Part shown: in pieces, positions 12,994-56,694 of the stretch
How the letters are laid out: every line of letters starts with the position of its first letter
How positions within the stretch are numbered: the first letter of the stretch is position 1
Assembly: GCF_023055435.1 (NCBI RefSeq)
Contig: NW_025963868.1
Coordinates: 25,234,001 to 25,298,000, forward strand
DNA from: Haliotis rufescens
Lineage: Eukaryota
Direction of reading: 5' to 3'
Length of the DNA stretch: 64,000 nucleotides
Position numbers and translations under genes: made by a program
The notes under the pieces: generated by a model
What the model was told of the DNA's origin: nothing
The model's database searches: none
The model's input: only the letters and a program-made list of their open reading frames with translations

Positions 12994-13386
12994 TATTCGA
13001 TATGACACAGTGACGGAAGTACTAACGCTTGGAATTCTGGGATAATATTTAACCTAATCGGTGCTTTAACCAAGATGTTAAAATTTAACCGAGTGGTTAG
13101 ATAACCTAATGGTTATCTATTGATCCTGCAACAGTATTTTAACGGCTGGTTAACTAACGTGTGGTTAAATATTTAACGGTTGGTAAGGAGTTAACCTGAC
13201 GTTAAAATAACCGGGTTCAGAACAACCGGGCCCTGGCCATTACATAATCTCTATGTACTGATCAAATACTGACATAAGGTACACATACGTTCTACAGCAA
13301 TAAATAATGCACACCATCACTATAGGTCTAACTTATTGTAACTTAAACATGAAAATCTTAGCCGTTGGCTTGATATGCTTGCTTGC

Positions 13387-17350: not shown

Positions 17351-18276
17351 TCAGACATTTGAATCCAAATGTATTTATTCAAGAGCTGCACATTTACCTC
17401 TCCTCTGGATCAGTTAATACTTATTTCAAGTAGGTATCATGTTGAATATTGTCATGGTAGAATGGAGCTTAGGCGCTTGTTTCAAATTATATGAGACACC
17501 TAATCAACAGTGAGACTAGCCTAAAATTTCAAAACACAGCAGGTTTACTGACTGTTCGTCAAACTGTCAATATTTAGAAGAATTTCCTATCGGTGTTTGT
17601 AAAATCATGTAATGTCCCTTGGAAACCCCTGTTACATAACTTCTTGTCAAATGTCCCCGTGGGGACCCGGGGAAGATAAACAAGAATGTGTCCTCAGTCC
17701 CCCAATGCTGGTCGTAAAAGGCGACCTAATTGGGCAGCCTGTTTGCCGTGGGCTGCGACCCTGTGTCGGCAGAGGAAGGGATTCTTGTGGTTGAGGGCGA
17801 CGGAGCCGGCAAATAGTGCTCCTTAGTCCAACACACCACTTCGACCCTAACTTTGCCTAGACGGGCGGTAGAATGGGCCCGATTCTATCAATCGGCTGGT
17901 CACGTCATGCCCTGTGCATAAAATATTTCATGCACACTTTTGATGTTAAAAAAAATAATTTAACCTAAATGTATATCATATCTAACAATCTATAAAACTT
18001 GCTTAGAGCCCTATGCCCAGAAGGCGGTGGCTCATGGGCCAATCTGGTGATGCTGACCTCCGAATTCTGTACTTCTCCAATTGATTGTCATGGGCCGAAC
18101 CAGCCTGACCTTTAATTTGGTAGAATTCTATAGCTCTTCGTGTCAAATTTGCTGGAGTATACCACCCCTTTATCCCCAGTCTTTGCAGCTTGGAAATCCG
18201 CTGCAGCATAAGACTGTCCTTGTAGACATTCCATGGTGGGTGGGGAAAAGGGGTGCCGAATCATTTTCCTTTCGAC

Positions 18277-19524
18277 ATGGCTTCCCAACACCCTGGTTCA
18301 AAACGTAGATACATAGAATCTGACAATTCACCTGACGAAAATACCACCAACCGATCTGACTATTGGCCACGTTTTTTGATTATCGAAGCTTGTGACAAAG
18401 AACCAATAAAACTAAATCCGTTTGCAATCTCCAAAGGTATCGCTGGTGCCTGCGGAAAGGTTACAAATGTCACCAAGCTTCGATCCGGTTCTCTCCTTGT
18501 GGAATGTGCACAGAGACAGCAATCCATCAATCTTCTCGGTTTGAAAGAGTTTGTAAATATCAAGGTTGCTGTCTCTGAACACAGGACACTGAACTCATGC
18601 AAGGGAATTGTCCGTGACAGGGCTCGCTGCCTGTCCGGCATGACCGAGGATGAAATAGTCAAAGAACTTGTCCAGCAGTCTGTCACAGCTGTTAAACGAT
18701 TCACTGTCAAAAAGGATGGTTTGGTTGTAGATACCAACACCTATCTCTTCACTTTCGCCCGTTCGAAGATTCCACAATCGATCAAAGCCGGTTATTGTAA
18801 CATCGGAGTGGAGGTGTATATCCCCAATCCACTCCGGTGCTACACCTGCCAAGCGTTTGGACATGGATCCAAGTCCTGCCGTGCCTCTGCTGTCTGTTAC
18901 CGCTGCGGTGACAAGCATGAGGCCACTGACTGCAGGAAGGATGTGAAGTGTTCGAACTGTGGTGGGAGCCATATGGCATCTTCCAAATCCTGCCCTGTCT
19001 GGCAACATGAATTACAGATCATGAAAATCAAGACTGAGCAAAACCTCTCCTACTATGAAGCTAAGAAGAGGGTTGCAGGTTCTACTGCAACCACTTCTTC
19101 TATCTCTCGTCCTCCTGTCACCACTGCCTCTATCGACTGCCAGACTGATCTGACATGGGTCAAGTCTGTGCAGCCACTTCCTACTGCTTCACTCGTTAAA
19201 CCAGCTGTGACACCTACGTCTGTGACTCCTAAAAAAAAAACTGTAAAAAATGTTGAGTCTCAGACTCCTAAAGCAACATCAGAATCAGAACCAGAACCAG
19301 TTAAACTGTCAAACAGGGAAAAGAAATTATTGAAAAAGAAGCAGCTGAGAGAACAGCTGCAAACACCAAAGGCCACCTCTCCTTTAGAGGTCCCAGTAGA
19401 GGTCCATAACTCCTTTGGTCCTCTGGACATGGAGGTAACTCCATCTCCTCATGATACCAATAGGAGTACCACAAAGTCTTCCTCACGTTCGCGTGACATT
19501 TCTCCCGTGGAAGCACCACCATGA
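18277..19524 (+). CDS. LINE ORF1, gag-like nucleic-acid-binding protein
   Basis: PRFLII..NPFAI..KLRSGSLLVE; YIPNPLRC; three CCHC knuckles (CYTCQAFGHGSKSC, CYRCGDKHEATDC, CSNCGGSHMASSKSC); first ATG at 18277. Confidence 0.92.
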   Translation: MASQHPGSKRRYIESDNSPDENTTNRSDYWPRFLIIEACDKEPIKLNPFAISKGIAGACGKVTNVTKLRSGSLLVECAQRQQSINLLGLKEFVNIKVAVSEHRTLNSCKGIVRDRARCLSGMTEDEIVKELVQQSVTAVKRFTVKKDGLVVDTNTYLFTFARSKIPQSIKAGYCNIGVEVYIPNPLRCYTCQAFGHGSKSCRASAVCYRCGDKHEATDCRKDVKCSNCGGSHMASSKSCPVWQHELQIMKIKTEQNLSYYEAKKRVAGSTATTSSISRPPVTTASIDCQTDLTWVKSVQPLPTASLVKPAVTPTSVTPKKKTVKNVESQTPKATSESEPEPVKLSNREKKLLKKKQLREQLQTPKATSPLEVPVEVHNSFGPLDMEVTPSPHDTNRSTTKSSSRSRDISPVEAPP

Positions 19525-22500
19525 ATCCACAAAATATAATACAATGGAATTGCAGAGGTCTTAAGAAGAATTTTAATGAAATACAACTTTTAATTCAAGA
19601 TTTTAAACCGTCAGCTTTTTGTCTCCAAGAAACATATCTAAAAAACACAGATCTATTTGATATCCGTCAGTACAGTTCTTACCACTCGTTTTCCCCTCCT
19701 GGTGATAAAGCTACAGGAGGTGCCTCTATCCTGGTGAAGCAGGGCACTATCCATGGCCCTGTTCCACTCAATACTACGCTACAAGCCGTTGCTGACCGTG
19801 TTACTTTAAACATAGTGTTTACATTATGTTCATTGTATCTTCCACCTTCCTCAACTATCCGTCAATCAGATCTTCAGACTTTGTACGATCAGCTCCCGAA
19901 GCCCTGTATCATCATGGGCGATTTAAACGGTCATAATCCCCTATGGGGGAGTACTGACATAAATAAAAAGGGAAAAGTCCTTGAAGATTTTATCTCAAAC
20001 AATGATTTATGTATCTTCAATGATGGTAATACCACATATCTTCATCCCGCCACTGGCACATACTCTGCCCTTGACCTTTCACTGACAGATTCAAATATTT
20101 TAAATGAATTCGAATGGTCTGTCCATGATGACCTTTGTGGAAGTGACCATTTTCCAACAATACTTAAAACTATAAATCCGTCTGACGAACCACCTTCAAC
20201 AAGGTGGAACTTTACAAAGGCCGATTGGTCTTTATTCCAAACACTTTGTTCTGAAAAACTAAAACCTGAAAGTTTCAGGAATGTTCCTGATCCTATACAA
20301 CTTTTTTCAGATAAATTAAATGATATTGGAGACGAAAGCATTCCTAAGTCCTCTGCAAACCCCCATATACGTAAACCATGGTTCGATAACACTTGTAAAC
20401 AAGCTAGGAAAAATAGGAAGAAAGCTGAAAAATATTTCCGACGACATCCTACCGTCCACAATTTGAATAACGTTAAAATCACGGGCGCTAAAGCGAGACG
20501 TACCTTTAAACAGAATAAACGTCAATCATGGAGGAACTATGTTTCAAAAATTAATTCCCGCACACCTATGTCCAAGGTGTGGAACATGATTCAAAAGATT
20601 AAGGGGAAAGGGTCAAAATCTGGAGTTCACCATCTCAAAGATGGTAATACACTTTTAACAACTAAATCTGAAATAGGCAACAAACTTGGTGACACTTTGG
20701 CAAATCATTCCTCATCATCAAACTATAATCCTCAATTCCAGAGGTTTCAAAAACAGCAGGAAAAGAAAACAGTAAATTTTAACTCTGATAATGGTGAGGA
20801 CTATAACGAAACATTTTCACTCAATGAATTATATACTGCCCTAGGACAATCTCATGACACTGCAGCAGGAGCAGACAACATCCACTATCAGCTCCTGAAA
20901 CACTTGCCCGATTCATGTTTGGAAACTTTACTTAATATATTTGATGAAATATGGACAACCGGAAATTTCCCTCCTTCGTGGCACAATGCTATTATAATTC
21001 CTATTCCAAAGCCTGGACGGGATCACACAGATCCATCCAACTACCGTCCAATATCATTAACTAGCTGTGTTTGCAAAACCATGGAGCGAATGGTCAACAA
21101 TCGATTAGTCTGGTACCTGGAGACCAATAACCTCCTGAGTGACATCCAGTGTGGTTTCCGAAAAAACAGAAGTACCATTGACCATTTGGTGCGTTTAGAA
21201 TCGTTTATTAAAAATTCCATTGTCAACAAACAACATACTGTATCAATCTTTTTCGATCTAGAGAAAGCATTTGATACAACGTGGAAACATGGTGTTTTAA
21301 AAGATTTGCATGAATTTGGATTGAGGGGCAGATTACCTCAGTTCATATCTAAATTTTTAAACAACAGACAATTTCACGTACGAGTGGGCTCTACCCTGTC
21401 TGATCAATTTGATCAAGACCAGGGCGTCCCTCAAGGCAGCATACTGTCAGTCACCCTTTTCAGCATCAAAATTAATAGTCTCACTAAAGTATTAAACAAT
21501 AGCGTTGATGGTTCACTTTTTGTGGATGATTTCAATATTTCTTGTCGTGGTAAGAATATGAATACAATAGAAAGACAGCTACAGCTCTGTCTTAACAAAA
21601 TTCAAAAATGGGCCAACGAAAACGGCTTCAAATTTTCTAAATCCAAAACAAACTGTATTCACTTTTGTCGTAAATACAAACCTCACAAGGATCCAGATTT
21701 ATTTTTAGATGGTACTCCTGTCAAGGTAGTAGAGGAGGCCAAATTCCTGGGCCTCATATTTGACCGTCATCTCACATTCTTACCACACATTAAATATCTC
21801 AAGGCAAAGTGCCTGAAGGCTCTCGACTTGTTAAAAGTCGTTTCAAATTCCGAGTGGGGAGGGGATCAGACCACCCTCCTTCACTTGTACAGATCGTTAA
21901 TACGCTCCAAACTGGACTATGGTTCCATTGTCTATGGTGGAGCCTGCAAAAGCAATTTAGAAAAATTGGACACTGTACACCATCAAGGCCTAAGACTCTG
22001 TCTTGGAGCTTTTAGGACCTCTCCTGTGGACAGTTTGTATGTGGAGGCCGATGAACCTTCACTCGAACTGCGCCGCATTAAACTTTCACTGCAATATATC
22101 ACTAAATTGCACTCAAATAAATCTAATCCAGCATACAATTGTGTGTTCCACCCTCAATATGAAAACCTGTTTCAAAATCTCTCAAACCTGGTTCCACCAC
22201 TTGGAATCAGAATTCAAACACACATCACTACAGCTAAATTGGATTTAAATATTATTTCACCTCACCGTCTTCTCCTCCCTGGCAGATGGTGAAGCCAGAA
22301 GTAGACCTCACTCTAACCAATCTAAAAAAGTCGGATACCAATCCTTTGGTATATCAACAATCATATAACCAATTACGCTCCAAATATAATTCTCACAGGT
22401 CCATTTTTACAGACGGGTCCAAGGATGGTGGCAAAGTTGCAAGTGCCACCGTCATTGGATCCAGAACTGTCTCCTCAAGAATATCTTTACAGCTTTGACC

Positions 22501-26452: not shown

Positions 26453-29400
26453 ATGGCTTCTACATCGCCTTTGTTTAACGTGTCTCTGCTGCCTGAAGAT
26501 GTCCCTGGAGCTCAGTTTATTTATCCAGACGTCGACAGACATTCAGTTGTTCAGCTGAAACGGTGGTTGGAGTGCCGAGGCCTGCCGATGACAGGAAGGA
26601 AGACCGAACTCGTCGAAAGGTAAGTCGTCTTATTTATTGGTTTTCGTTAAAAATAGTATATGTAAGTTATGAGAATCTATGAAATATATATCTTGGTAAA
26701 GGTATCGTGCCGTGATTGTTATCACAATGGTATTACGGTACTCTGATGATTAACCCGATGTGCATATAATTTACGAGACAGACGTCATATCAAAATCCAA
26801 ACCGGAAGTGATTTCCGTAATATTTGTTCATGCTAATAACGGATAATACTGAAATACATTTGTGTGTTTCAACTCCATAAATGTATGTGGGAATAATAGA
26901 AATCTGTCGTATTCGTTATCAGCATGACATTTGCCTGGATGAGAGAATTCGGGCACTAAACGTTCGTCTGAAAAAGGGCAATAACTGTTCCAGTTTTCAC
27001 CGTTTCATGGACACTTAGGCCTAATACGTCCATGACCGTTCTAATCTAACAGCTTGGGCTATAATCCGGTAATTACTATATTATTTTTATTATACTCACA
27101 TGATGACCACAACCTGGTCTGGCAGCCCCAATACTATATGTAACTCTGTCAATGATTCTGTTTACACATGCAAACGTTTTTGTTATTATTACTATTATTT
27201 TCCAGATTTTTTAAGGCATAAATAATCCCACACAACGAAAATTTCCACGCGAAAATATAATTGAATTACCAAACAACTTTATAGCCATTTTCATCTCTAT
27301 GTAGTGTTTTTCTTCACACACTTGGGCTAATATGAACATAAGTATACAATTAATTTATTTACTTATATGCATAATTATTACTTCAAAATGACAACTGGTT
27401 CAGTATATGACACCATTGCTTCAGGTCACGAGTAAGAGCATTTCGGCATTTTCGAAATAAAACGGGTACCTAACCCTAATGATCGTAAAGGGGTGATTGA
27501 TCTTGTCAGTATTCTTCATGAAATTGCTATTTAAAAAAAGAAAGTATGTTTATTACTATACTCTGCAAAAAACTTGATCCTATTATCATGATTACCCAAT
27601 AACAATGATTAAAGTGATTGGACTAATATTACTAGTAATAATATAGATGGAAAGTAATCATGCAATCATTTACTAGTAAGCTCAGGGGTTGGAAACTGAA
27701 TTCATCTACTCATTAATCAATATCTGAAATTGTAACATAACTGATGTTTATCCATTGTTTTCACACAGATGTCAAGAGTGCATCACAGCTCAGCAGAACA
27801 CGAACATTGCCATTTCCATTGATAATGGGAAATGGTACCAAATAAAGGTTCAAGATGTTTTGGCATCTCTTAACAGGTAACTATGAGGTTTCAATTCCAG
27901 ATTTTATCTTTGACCAAATGCAAAGACTGCGTAAGAATGGGTTGAAATATTATTGATGCATTTCCATTTCTGGATTGAAATGGCATTGAATTCTGTTAAC
28001 TTTTGTCAAATGGATTTAATATTGTGAACAACATTTGTAATGGAACATCATTTAAAAAGTACCCAAAAAGAAAATGTAAGGGAATTTCCATTACTGTTCA
28101 CAGCATATTTATTCTGAGAAAATTATATTAATCACTTAAATACATTTGTAATTGAATTAATCAACTCATAAAAGAATTTGTTACAGGAATCCGAAAATAT
28201 TTTTCCATCAGGTTGAAATAAAAATGTTCGTAATATTTTAATTTTCAAAAGCTTCATGTCTTAATATGGGCGTTGTGAAAACAATATCCTTTGGGTCTTC
28301 TGTCATGAAATCCCAGGAACCCACCCGCAAATTAAATCAAATAATTGGTCCCTTAAGAAAGATAATACTTGCATCACATATATGTGATTACAATGTCACA
28401 TAGCTCGGTTTTAAGGAAGTTGATTATACTTGCACCAGGTGCATGTTGACATGAAAACCCAGTTGCACCAAACAAAATCAGCTTGTCCCCTGGTCCAATA
28501 AATATATCAAAGTTGAAACAGGCTGGTCTGCTGCCCGTGTCTTGTTTATTTTTGGATTATTGCTGTGAAGCGTAATAGGAACATTTGCACACAATCTAGA
28601 AGTACCCACAATGTGACAATGTCAAGCCCACGAAATCATGACAAATTACAAATAACACAGATTAGTTATGTAGTATGGTAAATAAACTGTACAGGTATTG
28701 AATGTGATCCAAGATTGATGTGTGGATACACAAGGGTTAGACTTATAGACACACAAATTTGGAATTTTACATGCATTTAGTGCATTTTGACATCAATATT
28801 AGGTTGCATGTTACAATAATATGTTGCACTGGTGCATGAATTATATAGCCAAATAGATACATGTGTCATGATTGTGTATTGCACTATTTTCTCTTTGTTT
28901 TACAGTTCAAGTCCGTGTTCGGCTGTGAGGCAACCTCCCACACCACCTATCACTGGATGGAAGGCCTTCCCTTCTGGCAACATCCCACCAACCTTCTCAT
29001 ATGGCGATATATACCAGTATATCATTGCATCAGCCAGACTACAGCCTCTACCACAAGTCACTCCTGTCAATGACAGTGATGATGATGATCAGGACAACAC
29101 CTTCAGCACTGCAAAGCCAATGAAGAAGGGACGAGCTTTTTTTAAGCGTGGCCACATACAAAATATTGAAACATGTTCTAAAAATGAGTATTATTATCTT
29201 AAATGTGAATGTCTTCCATCATACAGACTAGGTATGATGTACCATGTACATGTTACTCTTGATAATTTTGCAGTCATCCAGGATGCATCATGTGATTGTG
29301 TAGGTTCAGCCACTGGACGTTGTAGCCACATTGCAGGATTGTTGTTTGCATTAGAGGATTATACTGTCAACTTTGGCTATACAGCACCCTCATGTACTTC

Positions 29401-30442
29401 TTTCTCTTGTTCCTGGAATAAACCCCGAAACAAAACTAGAAACCCACAACCTGCCCACACTTTGCAGTACAGCAAAAAGAGAGCTCCTAACCGTGTTATT
29501 GATCATGACCCATGTCCTGTTGCAGATCAGTCTCACAGAGCTGACAGTAGTTTTGCAACTGCTTTCATTTCTACTGCACTTGCCTTGGATACAAATACTT
29601 CATGGCAGAGTATCCTAGAAATTACTTATGATGATTATGAATTGTCTAATGACTTGAAGTTATATCTCATGGATAAATGTGATGTTTTCATTGAAAATGT
29701 GAAAGAAAGTACTTCAGAGTATGGAGTTGGCCCTTGTGAAGTACCTGGTACTGTGGGTCAAGCAATTTCTGATCAGTGGCATAATGCCAGGTGGTACAGA
29801 GTGACAGCATCTATTTGTAAAGACTGTTCTATGGTATCCACAGATCGAGGTAGATTTCGCTTGTTATCATCACATGTATGGGGTATTGATTGTTTTAATA
29901 CTGTTGACATGAGGTATGGATCACATAATGAAAAAAAAGCCTTTGAAGACTATTCATTAAAATATGTAGAAACATTTACCTGCCTTGCAAGTGGTTTCTG
30001 GATAAATTCGAAGTATCCTGAACTAGGATGTAGCCCTGATGGCATCTTACAGTCTCTCAGTACAGATGTGGCTGATGGTGTTTTAGAAATTAAGTGCCCA
30101 TCAGTACTTGAAAACATTAATCCAACTGAGGCAAAAGAAAAACTTACAAAGAAGCAATACTATTCATTTTGCAGCACTTTCGAAAATGGCAGACTGAAAT
30201 TGAAAAGGAATCATAAATATTATTTCCAATGTCAAATGCAAATGGCCATCTGTGAAAAATCTTTTTGTGACTTTGTAATATGGTCGCCTGAGGGTATGTC
30301 AGTAGAAAGAATACCCTTCAATAAATTATTTTGGGAACAGACATACCGCCTCTTGAAAATATTTTACAAAAATATTCTAGTTCCTGAGATATTTGAAATG
30401 AGAGTACCAAGAAAGCTACTTCCCTTTGATCTGTCCAAGTAA
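26453..30442 (+). CDS. SAP + SWIM + YqaJ/lambda-exonuclease-like protein; exons 26453-26619, 27769-27876, 28906-30442; 603 aa
   Basis: SAP: VVQLKRWLECRGLPMTGRKTELVER; SWIM: CDCVGSATGRCSH; YqaJ: WHNARWYRVTAS, YGSHNE, GCSPDG, LEIKCP, YFQCQMQM; GT-AG junctions are phase-compatible (1812 nt). Confidence 0.9.
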
Positions 30443-32710: not shown

Positions 32711-35484
32711 CTATTTAACAAGTGGTGGCTGATAGTTGGAAAGCATTCCTATAACAAAAACTATCTGGGACGCTAAGTGTTTCATTGAAAGAGGAATAAC
32801 TGTGTTTAATATACGATACTCCCTCAACCTTCCCACTGATCTCTCCACATGTATTCTTGTTCTAGCAATAGATCGAGTCAAGATATCTTCTTGAGGAGTC
32901 AGCTTGTCCCTTTTGCCTAGAAATGGAGGAATATTCAAGTGTGCTCTACGGCTCATGAGGAGATCTTTGATATTGAAGCCTCTATCGGCTAAGATCAAAT
33001 CACCTGGGTTAATTTTTTCCAGAAAGCCTGATTTCCTGATAATATCTCTGTCTGATATGCTACCTTCATATGCATCAGACAAAAATGTAACAGCACCAGT
33101 TGGAGAAATACCAAGTAAAACTTTCAAGGTGTTGTGAGTTTTGTACTGAGAGTACATGTTACCTTGCTCACCATAATCACTTGGTCGCTCAGAAAACACT
33201 TCGAAACAATCAACAATAACTCTGATGTTTTTGAAGCTTTTAAACACAGATGGCAATGTTTTCCTGATAAGATGTCTAGAAGGAAAGATGTGATCTTTCA
33301 AAGTAATAAATTTCATGTACAGAAATTGAATCCAAGTGGTAATGATACAGGAAACAGAACCGACACTGATGTTATATCTATAGGATAAATCTTTTGTTGG
33401 AAAGTTTCTCCTTAATCTGACAAGTGTCAAAACAAGCTGGTCTTTGATTGATAAAACCCGGCACTTGCCAGGTTTACTGGAACTTATCTTATTTCCACGC
33501 CAGTAACAGATGTCATTTACACCGTCACCAAGGGAAGCAAAAAGATGATTAAAATGAACAGTTTTCATGCCAGTATAGTACTTGAATTTCTTCTTATTAG
33601 ATACCAAATTATTAAATAGTAAATCACAGCTTTTGTTGTCAAGATCCCTGCTTATTTCACAATCCGAATCAGGGACTTGTGCTGTCATCTTTTCATAAAT
33701 TTTAGATACCAGAATGCTGGAACACACAAACTCAGTCTGATTAGACTCATGCTTCGTTGTTGGCATTGCTTGGCAGGCAGCATCACTGGACCTGAGCTCA
33801 GTCAAGGTAGCCTCTTCTGTGTCAGCACCAGTAGCACAGACATTCTGTTCCTGTTGACATAAAAATTAACTAATGATACATAATGTTTGATCATCAACAT
33901 CTAAGGCATGGTTAGGAAATTGTTGTATCTAAGTGGCAATGTCATGGTTGAAGTAAGTTCCTGGTGCCTGAGTGAGTATGGCTTTACACCGCTTTTAGAA
34001 ATACTCCAGCAATATCACGACAGGGGACACAAGAAATGGGCTTCACACATTGTACTCATGTGGGGAATTGAGACCATTCTTTGGCATGGCGAGTGAACAC
34101 TTTAACCACTAGGCTACCCCACCGCCCCTCCTGTTGCCTTGAGGTCATACTTGTAAAATCTATTATTTCAACAATACCATAATACCACCTATTACAATGA
34201 TTGCATCAGCTGCTATTAATAAGATAAACAAATGGTGAACAAACAACGTGCTTAAATGCTTAATGCATCAATGAAAACAGTGTTATCAATTTCAATGAAA
34301 TTGAAAAGGGCAGGGAATAACTTTTAAATTACAACTGCTTATTATCTAGCCATGGTGAAATGACATTAATGAGTCTAACCCTTTAAGGTTAGGTGTAAGG
34401 CGACATTTTCATAAACAAGTTATCTGCTGAAGCTAACACTGACTTGCAACTATGTCTATATTCAAAGTAAATATTCCTTTAGGATAACATTATTAATGGT
34501 TTACATTCCAAAATTGCATACCATAATTTTTTTTACTTAAACAAAATATGGATCTAATATTTACCATTGTTTACACGGTTAAATATGATTGCAGAGCCCA
34601 TTTTACATCTGATTACAGGCTTAAATAAAAAAAACTTTACAAATGTAATACATTTATGGCAATACAAAATTTGGTCCATACCAATTCAGTATTGACTGTT
34701 TCCTGCCACTCCAGGTGCTTTCTAGAGGTGTATGGGTGGTCAGCTGCACACACTGCAAGTAAAGATAGGCCATCACCTGCTGTGGAAGTGGGCTCCAACC
34801 TGGATACCTTACTTGGAAGGGGACATCTCACCACAGGGCTCTTTCTTTTCTTAGAAAATTTCACCACCTAGAAAAAAAATAATATATGGACTGCACAAAT
34901 CTGCCACTATGTTTGGAACATGGGCCTAGAATCTACTTATTGCTCACATGGTTGCTTTAATCAATTTTCCATGACATTTGAACCCAAATTAATGTTGTCA
35001 TAATTCCTAATTAAATAAATCTAAATCAGTTGTTAAATCTGAAAACTTCACCAAATTGACAAAATGTGGTATGACATATCCAGTAAACACTTTGAACATC
35101 GAACATTAATTTGACCTTCTAGGCCTAGTCTACCTATGGTGGTATCGACATAGATCTAGATCTATGTGTCTGACGTTATATTGAAAAAAATACACAAATC
35201 ATAACACGTACCTGATCAAATGTATATGTTGCCGGGATAGGATCGGGATGTTCAAGTGAAGGACCATTCCCGCCGATAAAGTGCTTTGAACATATGTAGG
35301 TGTACTTGTTGACCTTGTCCGTCGTAAAGCCCTCTCGACGACAGGCGCGAACCCACCTTGTACACTTCTCAGGCTGCTTGTGAAACTTAGGAAACAAAAT
35401 AAAATGGATCCCTGCCATGTCAGGCCTATCCGTATAGCGGTTGTCACTTCGGCAGATCCCATACGCACAGTGTTTAGCTGGCAT
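32711..35484 (-). CDS. THAP + HTH + DDE_Tnp_4 transposase; exons 35484-35212, 34867-34682, 33850-32711; 532 aa
   Basis: THAP: CAYGIC..FPK..W..C..ICSKHF..PIP; HTH: LVLTLVRLRRN..DLSYRY; catalytic IVDCFE, LADRGF, RIHVER; phase-0 introns, no stops. Confidence 0.92.
33968..34128 (-). mobile_element. SINE family A (diverged) in the ISL2EU transposase intron
   Basis: Consensus match. Confidence 0.85.
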
Positions 35485-45933: not shown

Positions 45934-46277
45934 GATTTATGGGTAGACATGTCAGTGATGTTAACCATAGCAAAGACCTCGTTTGGGGTTAACCCGCTCC
46001 TTGAATCAGCACATGTTAAAGCCTATTAAGAAATCTATACTTATCACAAAGCATTATAAAGTATTATCACGCGTTAGCTTTATGAAACATAATCAGGGTG
46101 AATCTGGAATTCTTCCACGATCAAAGGTTAATTGTTAGCCTAATGGAAGCAACTCTGCATGGCGAATTGCAACACCTTTGACGTCTTGGTCACCCGTACT
46201 ATCATAATACTATAACAAACATTGTACTGTGCATTGTATTCTGTATGTACGCGAACTTAAAGATACAGACTGTCTGA

Positions 46278-49125
46278 TCAGAGAGTTCCGACAACAAGAG
46301 CAACACTTGACATCCGCCCTTCCCGATTGGGCAAAGTGGTACTTGGCCACGTTCTGGTTCTGCTTCAGGAACGAGACTGGAACTAGATATTGCATCGTCA
46401 TACATATTGTCTCGTATTTACCGTTGTTTTGCCGATGTAGGAAATAAAATGAGTTGAGGGAATTGCCGTTAAGCTGCACCGATGTTGGTTTTGGATTGCC
46501 GGTCTTGTCACCGAGGCTAATGCAGACTCGCAGATACGCGTACTGGATATTGCTCATATGGCCAAGATTGATGCTGGTGGTGACAACGTTGTTCTGTATT
46601 GGTTTAGCAACATCTTGTCCGTAGTGGACAGTTTCCGTGATCGTCTTGCTGTGAGCAAAGTTGAAGGCAGTTTGGAATTTAAGATAGCAGCTTGCCTCAG
46701 TCGGCAGGCTGACGACTCTGTTGTTGAGGTGGACGTTTGATTCCTTGTCCCGTATTGTAACCTTGTGGGAGTTCAAGTGGACACAGGACATCACTGCCGT
46801 AGACGGATTCATCCATCCGTGATCAAACTTGACCTTGACCTGGGTCGGGTGCGTGTCAAAGTTATGCAGAAGAAGTACAACCCTCTTTGAAGTTGGATCC
46901 ACTAAAGCATGCGATGCCACGAGTCTCTCAGCTCCATGGAATTGACTGTCTGTTCGCAGATACGTCATGCGATTTGAAAGCACCTGCCAGAAGTGATACG
47001 CCTCGGCTGTTTTTCTCTCGTGGTTGTTGGTGTCCAAGAGACTGTAATCAATGCTGGCTTGCCCAAAACTTTCTCTTTGTCCAAGCAAGAACGCCACAGC
47101 TCTGTCGACCACTCCACGATGATTCAGCATGGTAAACATTTCTGCATCAGTGGGTTAGGCTTCTGCATATTCACACCTATGATAGACCCCAAACCAAAGG
47201 CTGAACAGATGATGGGAATATCTTTACCTGTTTTCGAATGGGCATAACTTTCAATTAGATCTATTATCCCAACAAAGCGGGCTTCATTCGAACCTGAGAA
47301 GTAGTAGGATTCTCCTGTGATGTGCATATGGCTGAAAGGGTGAAAGGAAATGAAGTCAAGGTGTTTGACCGCCATGTCCAAAAACTCCTTGATATTTTCC
47401 CAAACCTTAAAGTCGTGTTTGTCCAGCTGACCAATGGCACCGGAATATGCCGGACCTCCAACTTTAACGTGTGGTAGAGTAGCCTTGACCTTTGCATTGG
47501 CGGCTTTGTGGTAGTCAGTAATCTGTGTCCAGTTAACGTTGTATTTCCACATACCGTCGACTTCGCTGATTGGTTCAAAGTATGGCGGTGTGTCAACCTT
47601 GGTTCCATCATGGACGGCCTTTAGCAACATGGCAGCCATATCAGCAGCGGCATCCACGTTGTTAGGGAAGTGGCCTTTGTGTTGAGATGTGTCCATCCAG
47701 TGTGGCCAGGCATCGGCTAGGGGAGATACATAAATAAAATTTAATGCATTTAACTATGGTGTTCATTAAGTATCTAAAAGTATCCCAACAGATTTAATAT
47801 TGCTAACATTTCTTGAGGCCTTTTTTCTGTCTTTATTTCCTGTTACATTATACTATTGGCTGTGTTATATCTCGAGTTCGGGCCACTGGTTGTGGTTCAA
47901 TGAGAATCTCTCCTGCATGAACGTCAATGTCATATCTTGACCACTTGAAAATGATTCCTTGGCTTGTTATAGACTAACGTTTAGTGCCGGATTTAGTCTT
48001 GTTAAGAAGATTATATGTACAAAATGCATGGTAAAAGGCGGTTGAGACTTGCTAAATCATTCTAGAATGAGTTTGATTAATCGTTCTATGGGACACAGAC
48101 AAGCATAGTTTGTCTCCCAGACCTTTTAATTTCTGTCAAACATTAGTAACTACTTCGAAAACACAAGCTGAATGTTCACAAGCGAACCATCAGCTACACT
48201 GTCTTAAGATGAGTATTCTTATGTTCTCTCAAACAAATTATGCATGACGATATAATAGATATTATCATTTTCATTTTTGGTCTTTCTATTTCATGGGAAT
48301 GATGTGTAAAAGCAAATGCAGCTTTTGCATCGTTAAAAGCTGTATGGAAATTAAAATTTTTCAGAATGTCATCAAGGTTAAAACTGATCTGACCTCTAAG
48401 ATCCATCATGATTTCTCTCCCCGGGGTTCGTCCGTATCCATCTCTGTTGGCAGAATATATAGAAACTATGTTCTGCTGGAAGCTTGCATTCCGGAAGTAA
48501 GCTGGATCAGCATAACCCTTCCGGTGAGGATCTTGTGGTGCCTTCACACAGTGTCATGATCATGACATTGTTGTAACTCATAGGGATGCTAACGTGAGTG
48601 TGTTGTACGTCGGGGTGTGCTGACGTGTGTGTTGTACGTCGAGGTGTACCAATGTGAATGTGTCGTTCATCGATGTGTACTTCGGTGAGTGTGTTGTTCA
48701 CCGAGGTATGCTACATTGTGTTGTTCCTCGAGGTCTGCTGACGTCTGTGCTATACGTTGAGGTGTGCTGACGTCAGTGCGTTGCACATTGAGGTGTGCTG
48801 ACGCGTGTGTGTGCTGTACATCGGGGGGCTGACGTGTGTGTGTGTTGTAATATGAGGAGTGCTGACGTGTGTGTGTGTGTGTGTGTTTGTGTTGTACATC
48901 GAAGTGTGCTGACGTGTGCGTGTGTTGTACATTGAGGTGTGCTGACGTGTGTGTGTGTGTGTGTGCTTGTGTTGTACATCGAGGTGTGCTGACGTGAGTG
49001 TTAAACATCGAGGTGTGCTAACGTGTGTGTGTGTGTGTGTGTGTTCTACATCGAGGCGTGCTGACGTGTGTGTGTGTTGTACATCGATGTCTGCTGACGT
49101 GAGTGTTGAACATCGAGGCGTGCTG

Positions 49126-49166
<41 letters not shown>

Positions 49167-49487
49167 GTACATCGAGGCGTGCTGACAGGTGTGTGTGCTT
49201 TACATCGGGGGGGGGGGGGGGGGGGGGGGGGGGCTGACGTGTGTGTGTCTTGAACATTGAGGTGTGCTGACATGTGTGTGTGTTTGTGTGTGTGTGTGTG
49301 TTGTACATCGAGGTGTGCTGACGTGTGTGTGTGTTGTACATCGAGGTGTGCTGACGTGTGTGTTGAACATCGAGGCGTGCTGACGTGTGTGAGTGTTGAA
49401 CATCGAGGTGTGCTGACATGTGTGTGTGTGTGTGTGTTGTACATCGAGGCGTGCTGACGTGTGTGAGTGTTGAACATCGAGGTGTGC

Positions 49488-49523
<36 letters not shown>

Positions 49524-50622
49524 CTGTTGTACATCGTAATGTGCTGACGTGTGCGTGTGTTGTACATTGAGGTGTGCTGACGTCAGTGCGTTGTACATTG
49601 AGGTGTGCTGACGTGTGTGTGTTGTACATCGAGGTGTACCAGCATGAGGAGTGTTACGTGTGTTGTACGGTGTCCTGACACTGATTGTGTTGGTCATCGA
49701 TGTGTATCACCGCCAGTATGCTGTACATGAGTATTACCAACGTCAGTGTGTTGTACATCGAGGTGTGTTAGCATGTGCTGTACATCAATTTGTGCTGGAG
49801 TGTGTTGCATATCAAGGTGTTTTGACGTGTGTTGTACATCGATGTCTACTAACGTTAGTATGTTGTACGTTGATGTTTGTTGTCGAGGATGTGTTGTATG
49901 TAGGGGCAAAATAAAATATGTACATTTTTTTTATTATATGGGGCTGTAAAGGCATTCTTTTTTTTTTTTAATCTTTTTCAAATCCATTGCTAGGATTCGA
50001 TAAGAGTTGCAGTGATATATGAACAATATCTGTCCATGATCCTAGCACACAAATAACGATTTGTAAAAATAAACTCGATCACAAAATTCAACGTTTGTAT
50101 CAACACCTCGATCTTCATCCTCGTGTTTATTCAGGTTATAAAAGCTTGTACGTCCCAGTACTTACTCGGGTAAATATATAACATCAACACTAACGAATAA
50201 CCGGTCTCGATTTTCCCACAAAACATGTTCCATTGGGGGAAAAAGGCAAAATTGCGGTGAAGATTAAATGAATGGATCACTACAAATCAATGATAACAAC
50301 GGGTGTTCGCGAAAAGGGTAAGCATGTCTTGCCCTACCAGCAGCAGAACACTTAATATGACCACACCATCTACCTTCTCAAAGGCTCCAATATCTCCTTT
50401 GTTCCAGCGTGCAGCCCTGGCACCAGTTTTCTTCACGTACTGGATGATACTGGGCTTATCAAACCCCATCTTGCCGTTCCAGCGATCAGGATCAAACGTC
50501 TTCCGTCCTCCTTTGAGGACGAAATCCTGAAAGATTGTCACTTGATACTGACCAGTGACTAGGCACAACATATAAACTATGATTGCCACACAGAGTGACA
50601 TCTTGGCTGTTGAGAACGACAT
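46278..50622 (-). pseudogene. Secreted GH86 beta-porphyranase/agarase-like glycoside hydrolase; exons 50622-50374, 48541-48394, 47716-46278; two frameshifts
   Basis: Signal peptide MSLCVAIIVYMLCLVTG; QDPHRKGYAD; YFEPISE; VKVGGPA; DFKVW..FLDMA..LDFISFH; GSNEAR..IDLIESY; PIICSAFG; C-terminal beta-sandwiches ending MSSVALVVGTL* in an alternate frame; phase-compatible GT-AG introns. Confidence 0.75.
48580..49900. repeat. Compound minisatellite (TTGTACATCGAGGTGTGCTGACG plus a variable (TG)n spacer) in GH86 intron 1, with a long poly-G run near 49206-49233
   Basis: Dozens of units visible; accounts for the His/Thr-rich ORFs in the track. Confidence 0.93.
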
Positions 50623-50854
50623 TGTTTGCCGGAATGTAGGATAGACGGCAGTTGTCCTGTATATCAGGTGAGGAACGCAGGCGGGTCAAGGTTTATCTGA
50701 TATAAAGTTGGCTGGTTGTGTAGGTCAAGATGACATTTGTACATGAGAAAGAGACATTTGTTTATGAGACTGTAATGATTCATGTTGTTTTTGCAATGAA
50801 AAAGTATGCAACTATCTAACCCTGATTGTAATTTTGTTTGTCAACACTATGCCA

Positions 50855-52710: not shown

Positions 52711-53078
52711 TGTTTGTTTATTTGTTTGTTGTTTAATACCGCACTCAGCAATATTCGAGCTATATGACGGTGGTCTGTAAATAATCGAGTCTGCACCAGA
52801 CAATCCAGTGACTGACATCATGAGCAGCGATCCATGCAATTGGGTTGGTTGGTTGGTTGGTTTGTTGTTTAACGCCGCACTCAGCAATATTCCAGCTATA
52901 TGACGGCGGTCTGTAAATAATCGAGTCTGGACCAGACACTCCAGTGATTGACATCATGAGCATCGATCCACGCAATTGGGACATGCATCAACGAGCCTAA
53001 CCACCCGATCCCGTTAGTCGCCTCTTACGACAAGCATGGGTTACTGAAGACCTATTCTACCCAGGATCTTCACTGGTC
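52711..53078 (-). mobile_element. Tandem partial and full family B copies
   Basis: Consensus match. Confidence 0.85.
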
Positions 53079-53139
53079 CACTGCCTCGTGGACATTGTAT
53101 CAGACTGTGATACTGATGAGAATTGTGGCTTTGTCAAGT

Positions 53140-54110
53140 TTGATGGCATTCTGGTGAGGATCTTCTGGTGCCTTGACGCAGTGGCATGATCATGACAGAG
53201 TTGTAAATCTTAGGGATGCTGACGTGCGTGTGTTTTACATTCAGGCGGGTTAACGAGAGTGTGTTGTACATCGAGTTGTGCTGACCAAATTATGTTTTAT
53301 ACTGAAGTATGTAAACGTCAGTGTTTATACTATGAATTGTGCTTACATGAGTGTGTTGTACATCGAGGAGTTTTAACACGGATGTGTTGTTTGTTGAGGC
53401 AAAATAGCACCTGTCAATTATAAGGTGTTCATAAAGGCATACATCCAGCAGGTTTTGTTACAGATTCATTTCTAGGATTCGATAAGCGTCATACAATCTG
53501 TCCATGGTTCTTGCCATGCAGTTGCCATCTTGTTGACGACTAGCAGAAAAATACCTTTATAAATATTAACTAATCGCATGTATAAACTAAGGCGTTCAAG
53601 GGATATTACGAGTTTAGCATGTGTGTCATCCCCTCGACCTTCATACTCATGTTCATTCAGCTTATGAAACCTTGAACGTCCAAGTGATGGCTTGGGTAAT
53701 TATAGAAAGCCAAGGCAAGAGAATAACTAGTCACGACTTTCCTACAAAACAAATTCCATTGGGAGCAAACGGCAAAATGCAGTGAAGATGAACAGATCAC
53801 TGGAAATGAGTGATACCACCACGACTTGTTCTGCATGTCCAGCCCCATCTTGCTGTTCCAGCAATCATAATCAAACATCTTCCGTCCTCCTTTCAAGAGG
53901 ATTTCCGGAAAAAGTGTCACTTGTAATTAAACCAGTGACCAGACATATCATATAATCTATGATTGTGATCCATAATGACATGTTGCTTGTTGGGAGCGAT
54001 ATTATTTGCCGGAATGTGGGATGGACGGCAGTTGTAATATCAGGTCAAGGTTTATCTGACTTAAAGTTTGTTTTTGTAGGTCGACATGACGTGACATACA
54101 TTTGTAGACA
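53140..54110 (-). pseudogene. Truncated duplicate of the GH86 gene 5' region (promoter, exon 1, intron 1, start of exon 2)
   Basis: VTLFPEILLKGGRKMFDYDCWNSKMG versus VTIFQDFVLKGGRKTFDPDRWNGKMG; acceptor AG|GCACCAGAAGATCCTCAC; homologous intron blocks. Confidence 0.85.
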
Positions 54111-54537: not shown

Positions 54538-56121
54538 TCATGCGGCTGTTGGGTTTTGTAACATGAAATTAAAGTATTCTTTATGCTTGAACAGGTAAGG
54601 CAGGTCTTTCAATACGTAAATGTCAGTCAAGCAAATTGGATCGGAATGTGTCTTTCCATCAAAATATTCCCCTTTTCTAAACAGAGTAGCAACGTAGTCA
54701 AATGTGCATTTCTCTGGGTAGTCCCCCCATCGGGGGAAGTCAGCATTAATAGCAGAAGTCAGCTTCGTGATAACCTCCCGTGGAGAGGAGAACCATGATG
54801 CATGCCACCCAGCATAGTTGTCAGGTGATCCGATGAGCCAAGTTTCAAACATGCCCCAGGGGTGATTTCCTTTCTGGAGCTGTCGTATCACTCCTTTACT
54901 TCCACGAATAGCATCACTACTTCCTTTATAGATGTCTCTGAGCATCTGAATACTACACACTCCTACAACCGTTTTAGGGTGCTTCGTCATTGACCAAAAG
55001 AATCCATACATAAAACTGTGAAGAACAAACCCAACAGGGAAGGGATAGCCATTGTGAAGTTTGAGGAAGTGCAGGAGGTTTACAATTGGCGTTTCGTCGG
55101 TGTCCATAAATACAAATAAATCATCTTTTCTGAGCCCTGAGACTCTGGCCTCTACTGCAGGTGCAAGGTGCTGACGGATGTAAGTTTCGGCTATCCAACC
55201 ATTCAATCGTCCGCCAGCTGGGAATGTGTCCAGGTAGACATGCATTATCTTATGGTGGAATCGCTTCATGTAGCCTCTTCTCAAATTATGTAATAACCTT
55301 AACGGTCGTGGATCTCCATGTCCTGTATAGTTGGATTCCAGAATCACAAACAGATCCACGGCTGAGTGCACCTGTAACATCTTCAGCATCAGTACATGAT
55401 GCTCAATATTGAATGTCATGGCTAGAATCAGCCGTCGTGGCTTTTCTCTTGGCGTGATGATGTAACTGCGTGACAGTTTGGACAAGGCAGTCTTCACAAT
55501 GCTTGGCACAGAACAATGTTTGCCTGCATAACCTGAGCTGCACACACAGGTCACGTTAGGACCCTGCTCCTGCACTTTGGATGTACCTGGTTTAAAGCAT
55601 TTTAGCTTTCCGTTTATAAACGTGAAATCCTCGTTACTAAGATCTGGAAGAGTAAATTTCCACGGCTTTTTCAAATCATAATCTTTATACAAATTAGGAC
55701 CATCGTCTTCGGGTAGAGTCAGTGGTTCGGTGTTGTTTATTGAAAAGAAGTAGTCTATTGAGGAATACCACTTATCGAGATGGCTTATTTCTCCAGGTTC
55801 AAAAGGAAGCCATCTGTTTGTAGTATTCAAGTGACAGGACGTACCAAGATATCGGTGTGGATACAATGTATGATCAATGGTTTTGTTAAGACTTGACATT
55901 GACTTCGACGCCCCCAACAGTTTACTTGTGTTGAGCGAGTACACACGATGTGTTAAAGATGTAACCATTTTTAAACCATCGACAGGAACTTTCAAAGACA
56001 CACTGGTGGATGTGTCGGTCATTCTGAGTAGCACTATCAAGAGGAAGACGATCTGTGCACAGATGACAGCAACGACTGCCCTTGACACCCCATATTTTAT
56101 GAACATTCGTAAAATACCCAT
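54538..56121 (-). CDS. MGAT3: Beta-1,4-mannosyl-glycoprotein 4-beta-N-acetylglucosaminyltransferase (GnT-III, GT17)-like; single coding exon
   Basis: Type II TM anchor; CVCSSGYAGKHCSVP; PRRLI..FNIE; VDLFVILESNYTGHG.PRPL; DTDE (DxD); YGFFW; AGWHASWF; KLTSAINADFPRWG; first ATG at 56121; splice acceptor near 56263. Confidence 0.9.
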   Translation of the reverse strand: MGILRMFIKYGVSRAVVAVICAQIVFLLIVLLRMTDTSTSVSLKVPVDGLKMVTSLTHRVYSLNTSKLLGASKSMSSLNKTIDHTLYPHRYLGTSCHLNTTNRWLPFEPGEISHLDKWYSSIDYFFSINNTEPLTLPEDDGPNLYKDYDLKKPWKFTLPDLSNEDFTFINGKLKCFKPGTSKVQEQGPNVTCVCSSGYAGKHCSVPSIVKTALSKLSRSYIITPREKPRRLILAMTFNIEHHVLMLKMLQVHSAVDLFVILESNYTGHGDPRPLRLLHNLRRGYMKRFHHKIMHVYLDTFPAGGRLNGWIAETYIRQHLAPAVEARVSGLRKDDLFVFMDTDETPIVNLLHFLKLHNGYPFPVGFVLHSFMYGFFWSMTKHPKTVVGVCSIQMLRDIYKGSSDAIRGSKGVIRQLQKGNHPWGMFETWLIGSPDNYAGWHASWFSSPREVITKLTSAINADFPRWGDYPEKCTFDYVATLFRKGEYFDGKTHSDPICLTDIYVLKDLPYLFKHKEYFNFMLQNPTAA

Positions 56122-56694
56122 CTTTAATTTGACTCTGTAGTAGGTCACAGAACCCTTGATGATCAGGACATGTGAACGTTGATGGTCCTATCAGCAATTA
56201 AGTGCTTTATTGAAAACCTTCCAATGGTTCTATTTTCTTAAAGCTTCTGTGTCGATCATACACCTGTAAATAAAAACAACAAATATCAATACCAATTCAT
56301 GATAGAAATAACGTTTGATGAAACCAGAAAGGGGGCAATACTCATGCCATGCAAATACGAAAACGTCGGTTGTTTTCGTATATGGCCATTGAACGAAAAA
56401 TCGACGTTTTCCGGATGCTTTCTAACCATCGACTTTCGTCCAAATATCGTCGTTATTTGACATCGGAAGTTTCTCCAGGTTCTTGATTGACATTGTCAGT
56501 AGACAGCGTTTACCAGTATTTCTATTTCTTAGCTTCCATTTGACAGCTCTGTTTGTCAATTAAATACATGGTTGCATAGTTGCATGCGGCACATATAATT
56601 CTCTATGGTATTTATCCCAGTTCTGGTCGCTATACACGTGGTCCGGCCGTCTCACCTTACTAAGAATATGATCAACACTTTTAGAAGAGATATG

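What the first reader, a model, noticed from the sequence alone, without database searches (positions are those of the whole stretch)
46278..50622. Bacterial-type GH86 porphyranase/agarase gene with spliceosomal introns in an animal genome
Seen: a signal peptide, two GT-AG introns with compatible phases, and animal SINEs and MGAT3 as neighbours, which argues against contamination. Established: characterised GH86 beta-porphyranases and agarases come from marine and gut bacteria and act on red-algal galactans. Inference: horizontal acquisition by a seaweed-grazing mollusc followed by intron gain and local duplication, i.e. an endogenous red-algal galactan digestion gene family. The family call rests on motif recall, not a search.
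Basis: partly seen in the sequence, partly recalled or inferred. Interest (0 to 1): 0.8.

Follow-up and report, generated by a model that had tools for sequence, protein, structure and literature searches.

The report
Broken abalone copy of GH86-like gene
This is a frameshifted, decaying duplicate of a real, intron-bearing abalone gene related to bacterial red-seaweed-digesting enzymes, and its branch of the family has lost the residue those enzymes need to cut sugar chains.

Summary
It has a signal-peptide-like start and two GT..AG introns. The joints match spliced RNA contigs. The family call holds. A mollusc-only profile hits solved GH86 agarases/porphyranases at E 3e-42 to 8e-28, against 1e-4 for GH39. 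A model of the intact paralogue superposes on GH86 structures at TM 0.80-0.83.

Two points change the reading:
- **The window copy is broken.** It has a 28-bp deletion at about 47145-47148, which leads to TGA at 47124-47126, and a +1 base at 46320/46321. Unspliced contigs of two other runs carry both changes. The spliced transcript seen comes from the intact paralogue 135 kb away (17 of 17 diagnostic sites).
- **Its subclade has Ala at the catalytic nucleophile.** This holds for 7 of 67 other loci plus the window. 58 of 67 keep Glu. The subclade is still under purifying selection (dN/dS 0.12-0.32).

The family has at least 73 matches in this genome, which I infer to be Haliotis rufescens. It also occurs in mussels, a pearl oyster and a chiton, so acquisition predates abalones. 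This scan flagged the same family in four other windows.

The parts
50374..50622 (-). Exon 1 (249 nt, 83 codons, ends in phase 0). It holds the ATG and a signal-peptide-like N-terminus.
   Evidence: ORF; translation and length; the 3' boundary fixed by the spliced-contig joint 48540->50373 in X3 and X9.
48542..50373 (-). Intron 1 (1832 nt, GT..AG). It contains a 27-33-bp minisatellite at about 48598-49855, TG runs and a G27 run at 49207-49233.
   Evidence: Joint; intron ends GTAGAT...GAAG; tandem repeats.
48394..48541 (-). Exon 2 (148 nt, ends in phase 1).
   Evidence: Bounded by both joints; translation; aligns with the N-terminal part of GH86 proteins.
47717..48393 (-). Intron 2 (677 nt, GT..AG, pyrimidine-rich acceptor).
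   Evidence: Joint 47716->48394 in X3 and X9; intron ends.
46278..47716 (-). Long last exon. It covers most of the GH86 barrel plus two beta-sandwich domains, and is broken in this copy.
   Evidence: One open frame of about 500 aa in most paralogues, but two ORFs in different frames here.
47145..47148 (-). Site of the 28-bp deletion relative to L002, L003 and L005. It causes a frameshift.
   Evidence: DNA alignment. Contigs of X3 and X9 (paralogue and orthologue) carry the 28 extra bases. Contigs of X1 and X2 cross the site without a gap.
47124..47126 (-). Premature TGA created by the frameshift.
46320..46321 (-). One extra base (A on the coding strand) relative to all four close paralogues. 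It changes the C-terminal tail.
   Evidence: One search shows 'left out 1' at 46320 in the X3 and X9 contigs, and an X1 contig matching the window with 0 gaps.
47199..47201 (-). GCC (Ala) codon at the position of the GH86 catalytic nucleophile (BuGH86 Glu322).
   Evidence: HMMER alignments to 5ta1/5ta0; family alignments; coordinates.
47562..47567 (-). Ser-Glu where the family has Asn-Glu. The acid/base Glu is kept. The otherwise invariant Asn is lost only in the window copy.
   Evidence: Asn is in 78 of 78 rows of A3. Paralogues have the other base at 47566.
47334..47336 (-). Phe codon where the family has Tyr (F-H-x-Y motif).
   Evidence: Tyr in 70 of 71 Glu-bearing rows and Phe in 7 of 7 Ala-bearing rows; coordinates.
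46228..46277 (-). Probable 3' UTR up to a poly(A) site.
   Evidence: Loose end of 24 T before 46228 in a contig of X9, a run under a different species label. Not shown for the window copy itself.
53100..54010 (-). Degenerate partial duplicate of exon 1, the start of intron 1 and the first bases of exon 2. It abuts a dispersed repeat.
   Evidence: tblastn of exon 1 gave 53837-54002 at 58-66% identity. The sequence was read. An equivalent fragment with an in-frame stop lies upstream of the L003 gene.
52850..53080 (+). SINE-like dispersed repeat inside the duplicated block.
   Evidence: 5958 first-look candidates in the genome, of which 40 were scored. The rows at 95-96% identity lie at the matching places beside L002, L003 and L004. 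No tRNA gene was called.

Best explanation
The feature is a pseudogene. It is one of three block duplicates within about 140 kb of a 32.7-Mb contig of the red abalone genome; the species is inferred. The intact parent copy (L003, 135 kb away) has three exons, is secreted, and belongs to a large mollusc family descended from GH86 agarases/porphyranases.

The window copy kept its start codon, signal peptide and both GT..AG introns. It then lost 28 bp in the last exon, which gives an early stop after about two thirds of the barrel. It also gained one base near the 3' end and lost an invariant active-site Asn.

Independently of that decay, the whole subclade it belongs to replaced the catalytic nucleophile Glu by Ala and a conserved Tyr by Phe. 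The acid/base Glu and the rest of the fold were kept. That subclade has 8 loci here and orthologues in H. rubra and H. asinina.

Inference: the intact members are secreted, non-hydrolysing or mechanistically altered galactan-binding proteins. The window copy makes no functional product.
For: **Frame breaks**
- One search shows them against L002, L003 and L005. Searches give the ORFs and stops.
- Contigs of X1 and X2 reproduce both indels with 0 gaps.

**Transcripts**
- The only spliced contigs carry the intact form. The X3 contig matches L003 at 17 of 17 listed differences.
- The L003 gene has an intact exon 1, exon 2 and GT..AG introns.

**Substitution pattern**
- Window-specific substitutions are 2 synonymous to 9 non-synonymous. 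L003-specific ones are 4 to 1.

**GH86 membership of the family**
- The mollusc-only profile A4 hits 5ta1 at 3.4e-42, 8h97 at 1.5e-41 and 4aw7 at 8.1e-28.
- BPA_C is above the Pfam cutoff in P0001 and P0002.
- The AlphaFold model has pLDDT 92.3. Its top 7 Foldseek hits are all GH86, at TMq 0.78-0.83.

**Nucleophile**
- Glu in 58 of 67 loci, Ala in 7, not covered in 2.
- In A3, 71 of 71 rows have Glu against 7 of 7 with Ala, and 70 of 71 have Tyr against 7 of 7 with Phe.
- E322 is the nucleophile and E322Q is inactive yet binds substrate (PMC5849685, passages).

**Selection**
- dN/dS is 0.12-0.32 in 3 Ala-clade pairs and 0.15-0.39 in 14 Glu-bearing pairs.
Against: - All runs laid were contigs, which drop rare variants. 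A low-level spliced transcript of the window copy cannot be excluded.
- X1 and X2 may come from the individual that was assembled, so the indels could still be one allele rather than fixed.
- The window-lineage substitution counts are small (11 changes).
- The early stop lies in the last exon, so a truncated protein of about 330 aa could in principle be made.
- No binding or activity was measured for any member. Loss of hydrolysis in the Ala clade is inferred from one bacterial mutant and from general retaining-glycosidase chemistry.
Confidence: 0.82

Rival explanations
1. The window copy is a working gene, and the two indels are assembly or consensus errors.
For: The region holds homopolymers, a minisatellite and N gaps nearby. 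The two indels together sum to -27, so the far 3' end returns to the original frame.
Against: Contigs from two other runs (X1 records 1 and 2, X2 record 11) cross both sites with 0 gaps and 0-2 mismatches. The 275 codons between the indels would still be read out of frame, with several stops. The copy also lost the invariant Asn and shows a neutral-looking substitution pattern.
Confidence: 0.05
2. The gene, or its intact parent, is an active endogenous red-algal galactanase. It would use another residue or an altered mechanism in place of the missing nucleophile.
For: The fold, the acid/base Glu, and the conserved His119, Asp146 and Asn419 are kept. Purifying selection is as strong as in Glu-bearing paralogues. 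The parent is transcribed and spliced.
Against: Glu is replaced by Ala and the conserved Tyr by Phe in all 7 clade rows of A3. The milder E322Q change already inactivates BuGH86. The window copy itself is truncated.
Confidence: 0.12
3. The family is not a bacterial transfer into molluscs. It is an old eukaryotic gene, or came from another eukaryote.
For: The nearest outsider to the mollusc clade in the tree is P0047, which the database lists only from EukProt as a transcript-style name. Introns are shared by all copies seen here.
Against: - P0047 is only about 25% identical to mollusc proteins, and could itself be a contaminant or a separate transfer.
- All named non-mollusc relatives and all solved structures are bacterial: Flavicella, Bacteroides, and rows with T9SS sorting domains.
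- No other animal phylum appeared among 105 hits or among the 20 top-ranked hits whose clusters I looked up.
- The tree is unrooted.
Confidence: 0.15
4. The stretch is bacterial contamination of the assembly.
For: None beyond the bacterial affinity of the family.
Against: - Two spliceosomal introns are removed in RNA contigs.
- There is a poly(A) end.
- Host dispersed repeats, a LINE and a GT17 gene flank it.
- It lies on a 32.7-Mb contig.
- There are at least 73 related matches across 11 contigs.
Confidence: 0.01

Closest known systems
BuGH86, endo-beta-agarase of Bacteroides uniformis NP1 (PDB 5TA0, 5TA1, 5TA5 as listed by the tools)
   Same: Best sequence and structure match: E 1e-8 for the window's exon alone, 3.4e-42 for the mollusc profile over nearly full length, and TMq 0.82-0.83. 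Same layout of one barrel plus two Ig-like domains, and the same Asn-Glu acid/base motif.
   Different: About 19% identity. The mollusc proteins are eukaryotic, intron-bearing and carry a signal peptide. The window's clade has Ala at Glu322 and Phe at the conserved Tyr. The window copy is frameshifted.
BpGH86A beta-porphyranase of Bacteroides plebeius (PDB 4AW7) and the GH86 agarase Aga86A_Wa (PDB 8H97)
   Same: Same family-level matches: E 8.1e-28 and 1.5e-41, TMq 0.80 and 0.83. The Pfam domains PF18206 and PF18040, named after this porphyranase, are found in mollusc members.
   Different: Substrate specificity cannot be read from these similarities. RefSeq's names for the mollusc proteins ('beta-porphyranase A-like', 'beta-agarase-like', 'funoran endo-beta-hydrolase-like') are automatic.
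Glu-bearing GH86-like paralogues of the same genome (for example the arrays on C445, C601 and C90 at 23.88-23.92 Mb), flagged earlier by this scan
   Same: Same three-exon plan with a last exon of about 500 aa, the same family clade, and the same secretion signal type.
   Different: They keep the nucleophile Glu (58 of 67 loci) and are the better candidates for real galactanases. They are 36-50% identical to the window's exon.
Catalytically dead glycosidase homologues that became binding proteins, such as chitinase-like lectins and Klotho (recalled, not from a call)
   Same: The fold is kept, catalytic carboxylate(s) are replaced, and the protein is retained under selection and secreted.
   Different: They belong to other families (GH18, GH1). 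No binding has been shown for the abalone proteins.

Membership tests
Glycoside hydrolase family 86 (GH86) | Significant full-length sequence similarity to characterised GH86 enzymes, better than to any other GH family | tested here: met
   Window exon alone: 5ta0/5ta1 at 1e-8, 8h97 at 3.8e-8, 4aw7 at 3.1e-4. Mollusc-only profile: 3.4e-42, 1.5e-41 and 8.1e-28, against GH39 at 1.3e-4.
Glycoside hydrolase family 86 (GH86) | Fold of an (alpha/beta)8 barrel followed by two Ig-like beta-sandwich domains | tested here: met
   Tested on the intact paralogue L003 (97% identical over the first 184 residues of the exon). The model has pLDDT 92.3. The top 7 PDB hits are all GH86 at TMq 0.78-0.83, and the next hit has TMq 0.42. 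In the window copy the sandwich domains are out of frame.
Glycoside hydrolase family 86 (GH86) | Acid/base Glu in the Asn-Glu motif | tested here: met
   Glu is present at 47562-47564. Asn-Glu is in 78 of 78 rows of A3. The window copy alone has Ser in place of Asn.
Glycoside hydrolase family 86 (GH86) | Catalytic nucleophile Glu (BuGH86 Glu322) | tested here: not met
   Ala at 47199-47201. Ala is also found in 7 of 67 other loci and in H. asinina and H. rubra proteins. Glu is found in 58 of 67 loci and in 71 of 71 other rows of A3. The residue's role comes from passages of PMC5849685.
Glycoside hydrolase family 86 (GH86) | Hydrolysis of agarose, porphyran or related galactans | not testable with these tools
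No paper on an animal GH86 was found.
Processed-by-decay duplicate (unitary pseudogene copy) | Frame-disrupting changes relative to intact close paralogues, present in independent data | tested here: met
   28-bp deletion and +1 base. Both were seen in contigs of X1 and X2. Independence from the assembled individual is not known.
Processed-by-decay duplicate (unitary pseudogene copy) | Relaxed constraint on its own lineage | tested here: inconclusive
   2 synonymous to 9 non-synonymous window-specific changes, against 4 to 1 on L003. The counts are small.
Processed-by-decay duplicate (unitary pseudogene copy) | No mature mRNA of its own | tested here: inconclusive
   Only unspliced, low-depth contigs match the window form. 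The spliced contigs are of the L003 type. Contigs show presence, not absence.
Horizontally acquired animal carbohydrate-active enzyme gene | Integrated in host chromosome with introns and host transcripts | tested here: met
Horizontally acquired animal carbohydrate-active enzyme gene | Restricted animal distribution and one animal clade nested among non-animal sequences | tested here: inconclusive
   Every named hit is a mollusc. 37 mollusc-side rows form one side of a branch with SH-aLRT 100. However, the tree is unrooted, most outsiders are unnamed, and the nearest one is a EukProt transcript.

The most novel reading that the evidence does not exclude
Abalones turned part of a horizontally acquired GH86 galactanase family into a secreted, nucleophile-less pseudoenzyme lineage. 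That lineage has Ala for Glu and Phe for Tyr, and has been kept under purifying selection since before H. asinina, H. rubra and H. rufescens split. It would bind red-algal galactans without cutting them, for example as a lectin-like sensor, a substrate-holding partner for the active paralogues, or a gut or immune recognition protein. The window shows this lineage still duplicating and decaying.
Probability: 0.45. Interest if true: 0.65.

Novelty: new variant of a known kind. Interest (0 to 1): 0.5.

Why it matters
Digestion of agar and porphyran by marine herbivores is usually credited to gut bacteria. A large, transcribed, host-encoded GH86-like family would change that picture for abalones, mussels, pearl oysters and chitons. 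It would also give a clear case of an ancient transfer followed by intron gain and massive expansion.

This window adds two cautions for anyone counting such genes. Not every copy is intact: here one of three neighbouring block copies works. One whole branch also lacks the catalytic nucleophile, so it should not be scored as an agarase. If that branch proves to be a binding protein, it would be the first GH86 pseudoenzyme known to me. My knowledge here rests on the literature searches, which found no paper on an animal GH86.

Tried and rejected
**Rejected readings**
- **GH39 membership.** Pfam gave only a sub-threshold GH39 hit on the exon (18.8 bits against a cutoff of 26). GH39 structures score 1e-4 and TMq about 0.46, against 1e-42 and 0.82 for GH86.
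- **A tiny 35-nt third intron bridging the two ORFs.** I considered this while reading. Paralogues show a 28-bp deletion at that spot instead.
- **Contamination and assembly error.** See the rival explanations.

**Donor taxon: not obtained**
- It found nothing for P0047 or P0019.
- The search for homologous proteins with P0047 showed only that it comes from EukProt.

**Tree**
- The mixture-model tree did not finish. MAFFT timed out and IQ-TREE was unfinished.
- The tree I report is LG+G4 'quick' with SH-aLRT only. treekit warns that this setting is more prone to long-branch artefacts.
- 22 of 61 long-exon ORFs were used as representatives at 80% identity. Six loci with open frames under 430 aa were left out.
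- Five fragmentary matches were never fetched.

**Other limits**
- I did not check intron positions in mussel, oyster or chiton genes.
- Supplementary files of papers were not consulted. Those of PMC13342648 (the HGT compendium) might list mollusc genes that its main text does not name.
- A recount gives 58 and 2.
Full report
**What is at the coordinates**

The gene lies on the minus strand. Four ORFs line up with GH86 proteins: 50287-50622, 48194-48547, 47124-47696 and 46210-47139. Laying contigs of four public runs on 46150-50700 gave two joints, 48540->50373 and 47716->48394. Both have CT..AC ends on the plus strand, which is GT..AG on the coding strand.

From those joints the model is as follows:

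| Part | Coordinates | Size and phase |
|---|---|---|
| Exon 1 | 50622..50374 | 249 nt, phase 0 |
| Intron 1 | 50373..48542 | 1832 nt |
| Exon 2 | 48541..48394 | 148 nt, phase 1 |
| Intron 2 | 48393..47717 | 677 nt |
| Last exon | from 47716 | long |

- Exon 1 begins with a signal-peptide-like stretch. I read this by eye and ran no predictor.

**The window copy is broken**

In the genome's other copies the last exon is usually one open frame of about 500 aa. Here it is split into two frames. I aligned the window with its four closest relatives, which are 97.6-97.8% (three of them) and 89.7% (L005) identical in DNA. That alignment shows:

- a 28-bp deletion at about 47145-47148, absent from L002, L003 and L005;
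- one extra base at 46320/46321, absent from all four.

The deletion shifts the frame and gives TGA at 47124-47126.

The changes are seen in other data. In one search the contigs of X1 and X2 match the window with 0-2 mismatches and no gap across both sites, so the indels are not peculiar to this assembly. I cannot tell whether those runs come from the assembled animal. These contigs also cover introns at the same low depth, so they show DNA or unspliced RNA, not a mature message.

The spliced contig of X3 (1820 nt) carries the 28 bases and lacks the extra base. At all 17 of 17 listed differences it has the letter of L003. L003 lies 135 kb away on the same contig. It has an intact exon 1, exon 2 and GT..AG introns. 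X9, a run under another species label, also gave a spliced contig, and another of its contigs ends in a poly(A) tail at 46228.

On the window's own lineage I count 2 synonymous and 9 non-synonymous changes, against 4 and 1 on L003. One of the window's changes removes the Asn of the Asn-Glu motif, which is present in 78 of 78 aligned family members. I read the copy as a pseudogene.

**Family**

- **The window's own pieces give only weak hits.** Pfam on these gave sub-threshold hits to GH39 and PF18206.
- **Against solved structures the catalytic exon alone hits GH86.** It hits BuGH86 at 1e-8, a beta-agarase at 3.8e-8 and BpGH86A at 3.1e-4.
- **The family is small and mostly mollusc at the top.** A HMMER scan of 1.84 billion representatives with the intact L003 exon found 279 proteins at E <= 1e-3 and only 9 at E <= 1e-30.
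- **The best hits are RefSeq proteins of Haliotis and Mytilus.** Their automatic names include 'beta-porphyranase A-like'.
- **Full-length mollusc proteins carry BPA_C, some also PF18206.** BPA_C exceeds its curated cutoff in P0001 and P0002; both domains were hit only in P0005, below cutoff.
- **A profile of 35 mollusc sequences only (A4) matches GH86 structures over nearly their whole length.** The values are 3.4e-42, 1.5e-41 and 8.1e-28, with GH39 far behind at 1.3e-4.
- **The structure agrees.** An AlphaFold model of the L003 exon (pLDDT 92.3) has GH86 entries as its seven best PDB matches (TMq 0.78-0.83). The next family is at TMq 0.42.
That condition was best hits in GH39.

**Missing nucleophile**

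- **Role of the residue.** PDB entries 5ta1 and 5ta0 differ by E322Q. The paper calls E322Q an inactive nucleophile mutant that still binds the oligosaccharide (PMC5849685, passages read).
- **What aligns there.** In every alignment that Glu faces Ala in the window and its close relatives.
- **Counts within the genome.** Across 67 other loci of the genome, 58 have Glu, 7 have Ala (L002-L006, L008, L009) and 2 do not cover the site.
- **Counts in alignment A3.** 71 of 71 Glu rows stand against 7 of 7 Ala rows. The same 7 rows have Phe where 70 of 71 others have Tyr. From memory, in clan GH-A that Tyr supports the nucleophile. No call showed this.
- **Other species.** Database proteins of the clade from H. 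rufescens, H. rubra and H. asinina show F-H-P-F in 8 of 8. The Ser-Ala motif was found in 7 of 8, and one did not match my pattern.
- **Phylogenetic position.** The clade is one branch of the tree (SH-aLRT 99), sister to Glu-bearing copies.
- **Selection.** dN/dS is 0.32, 0.27 and 0.12 in three pairs, the same range as 14 Glu-bearing pairs (0.15-0.39).

The lineage is therefore maintained and expressed, but it should not work as a retaining hydrolase. Binding without cleavage is my inference.

**Size and spread of the family**

- **Matches in the genome.** The genome (1.33 Gb, 615 contigs) gave 73 matches to the catalytic exon, in arrays on C445, C601, C599, C90, C190, C11 and C1. Some may be haplotigs. 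For example, L002 on C285 is 99.3% identical to L003.
- **Species identification.** The lengths of seven contigs equal those recorded for Haliotis rufescens RefSeq proteins. This is why I name the species, and it is an inference.
- **Distribution across taxa.** A search with a mussel protein listed 105 proteins. Every named one is from Haliotis (four species), Mytilus, Pinctada imbricata or the chiton Liolophura sinensis.
- **Tree topology.** In a tree of 99 rows, the 37 mollusc-side rows form one side of a branch with SH-aLRT 100.
- **Timing of acquisition.** The family is therefore older than abalones and occurs in filter feeders.
- **Donor.** It is open. The nearest outsiders are P0047, listed only from EukProt, and a metagenomic 'agarase', P0019.

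**Local history**

- The block around the gene includes a degenerate partial copy of exon 1 (window 53100-54010) and a SINE-like repeat (52850-53080).
- The repeat recurs at 95-96% identity beside L002, L003 and L004. The partial exon-1 copy was found again upstream of L003.
- The whole block was therefore duplicated after those events.
- Of the three C90 copies, L003 is intact. L004 has several deletions and the window copy is frameshifted.

**Literature and earlier notes**

- Searches for GH86 with abalone, Mollusca or metazoa, for porphyranase with Haliotis, and for the RefSeq names found no paper on an animal GH86. I saw listings and abstracts only, plus passages of PMC5870069 and PMC13342648.
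- This scan flagged the family in four other windows of the same genome. Those notes agree with the family-level reading.
- As far as those short notes show, the pseudogene state and the nucleophile loss are new here.

Noticed in passing
window 18253-22292 (+): Two adjoining open frames of a LINE: a 423-aa zinc-knuckle ORF1, then a 923-aa ORF2 with endonuclease and reverse transcriptase domains. Both are uninterrupted, so this may be a young retrotransposon copy.
   Followed up: partly
window 54538-56148 (-): Single-exon 536-aa ORF with a glycosyltransferase family 17 (MGAT3-like) domain, Pfam E 1.1e-19. It lies directly upstream of the partial GH86 fragment.
   Followed up: partly
window 28832-30442 (+) and 32711-33805 (-): A 536-aa ORF with a YqaJ-like recombinase domain, and a 364-aa Harbinger/PIF-type DDE transposase with its HTH. 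A Myb/SANT-like ORF lies at 12328-13008.
   Followed up: no
window 48598-49855: Intron 1 holds a 27-33-bp minisatellite (unit like GTGTGTTGTACATCGAGGTGTGCTGAC) mixed with TG runs and a G27 run at 49207-49233. The same intron is only 1058 nt in the L003 gene, so the array length varies between copies.
   Followed up: partly
P0047 (protein): The nearest non-mollusc relative of the mollusc clade in the tree is listed only from EukProt, under a transcriptome-style name. It is about 25% identical to a mussel protein. Either a protist also carries a GH86-like gene or it is a contaminant.
   Followed up: partly
L006, L008, L009 (G000 C1) and P0002, P0206: The second branch of the Ala clade has also replaced a His kept in 69 of 71 other rows by Phe, and an Asp kept in 61 of 71 by Asn. 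This is further erosion of conserved sites in a lineage that is still under purifying selection.
   Followed up: partly
window 50302-50339: A stretch of about 38 bp in intron 1 attracts very deep contigs (depth 57-270) that run on into unrelated sequence on both sides in all four runs. It is probably a piece of a highly expressed or highly repeated element.
   Followed up: no
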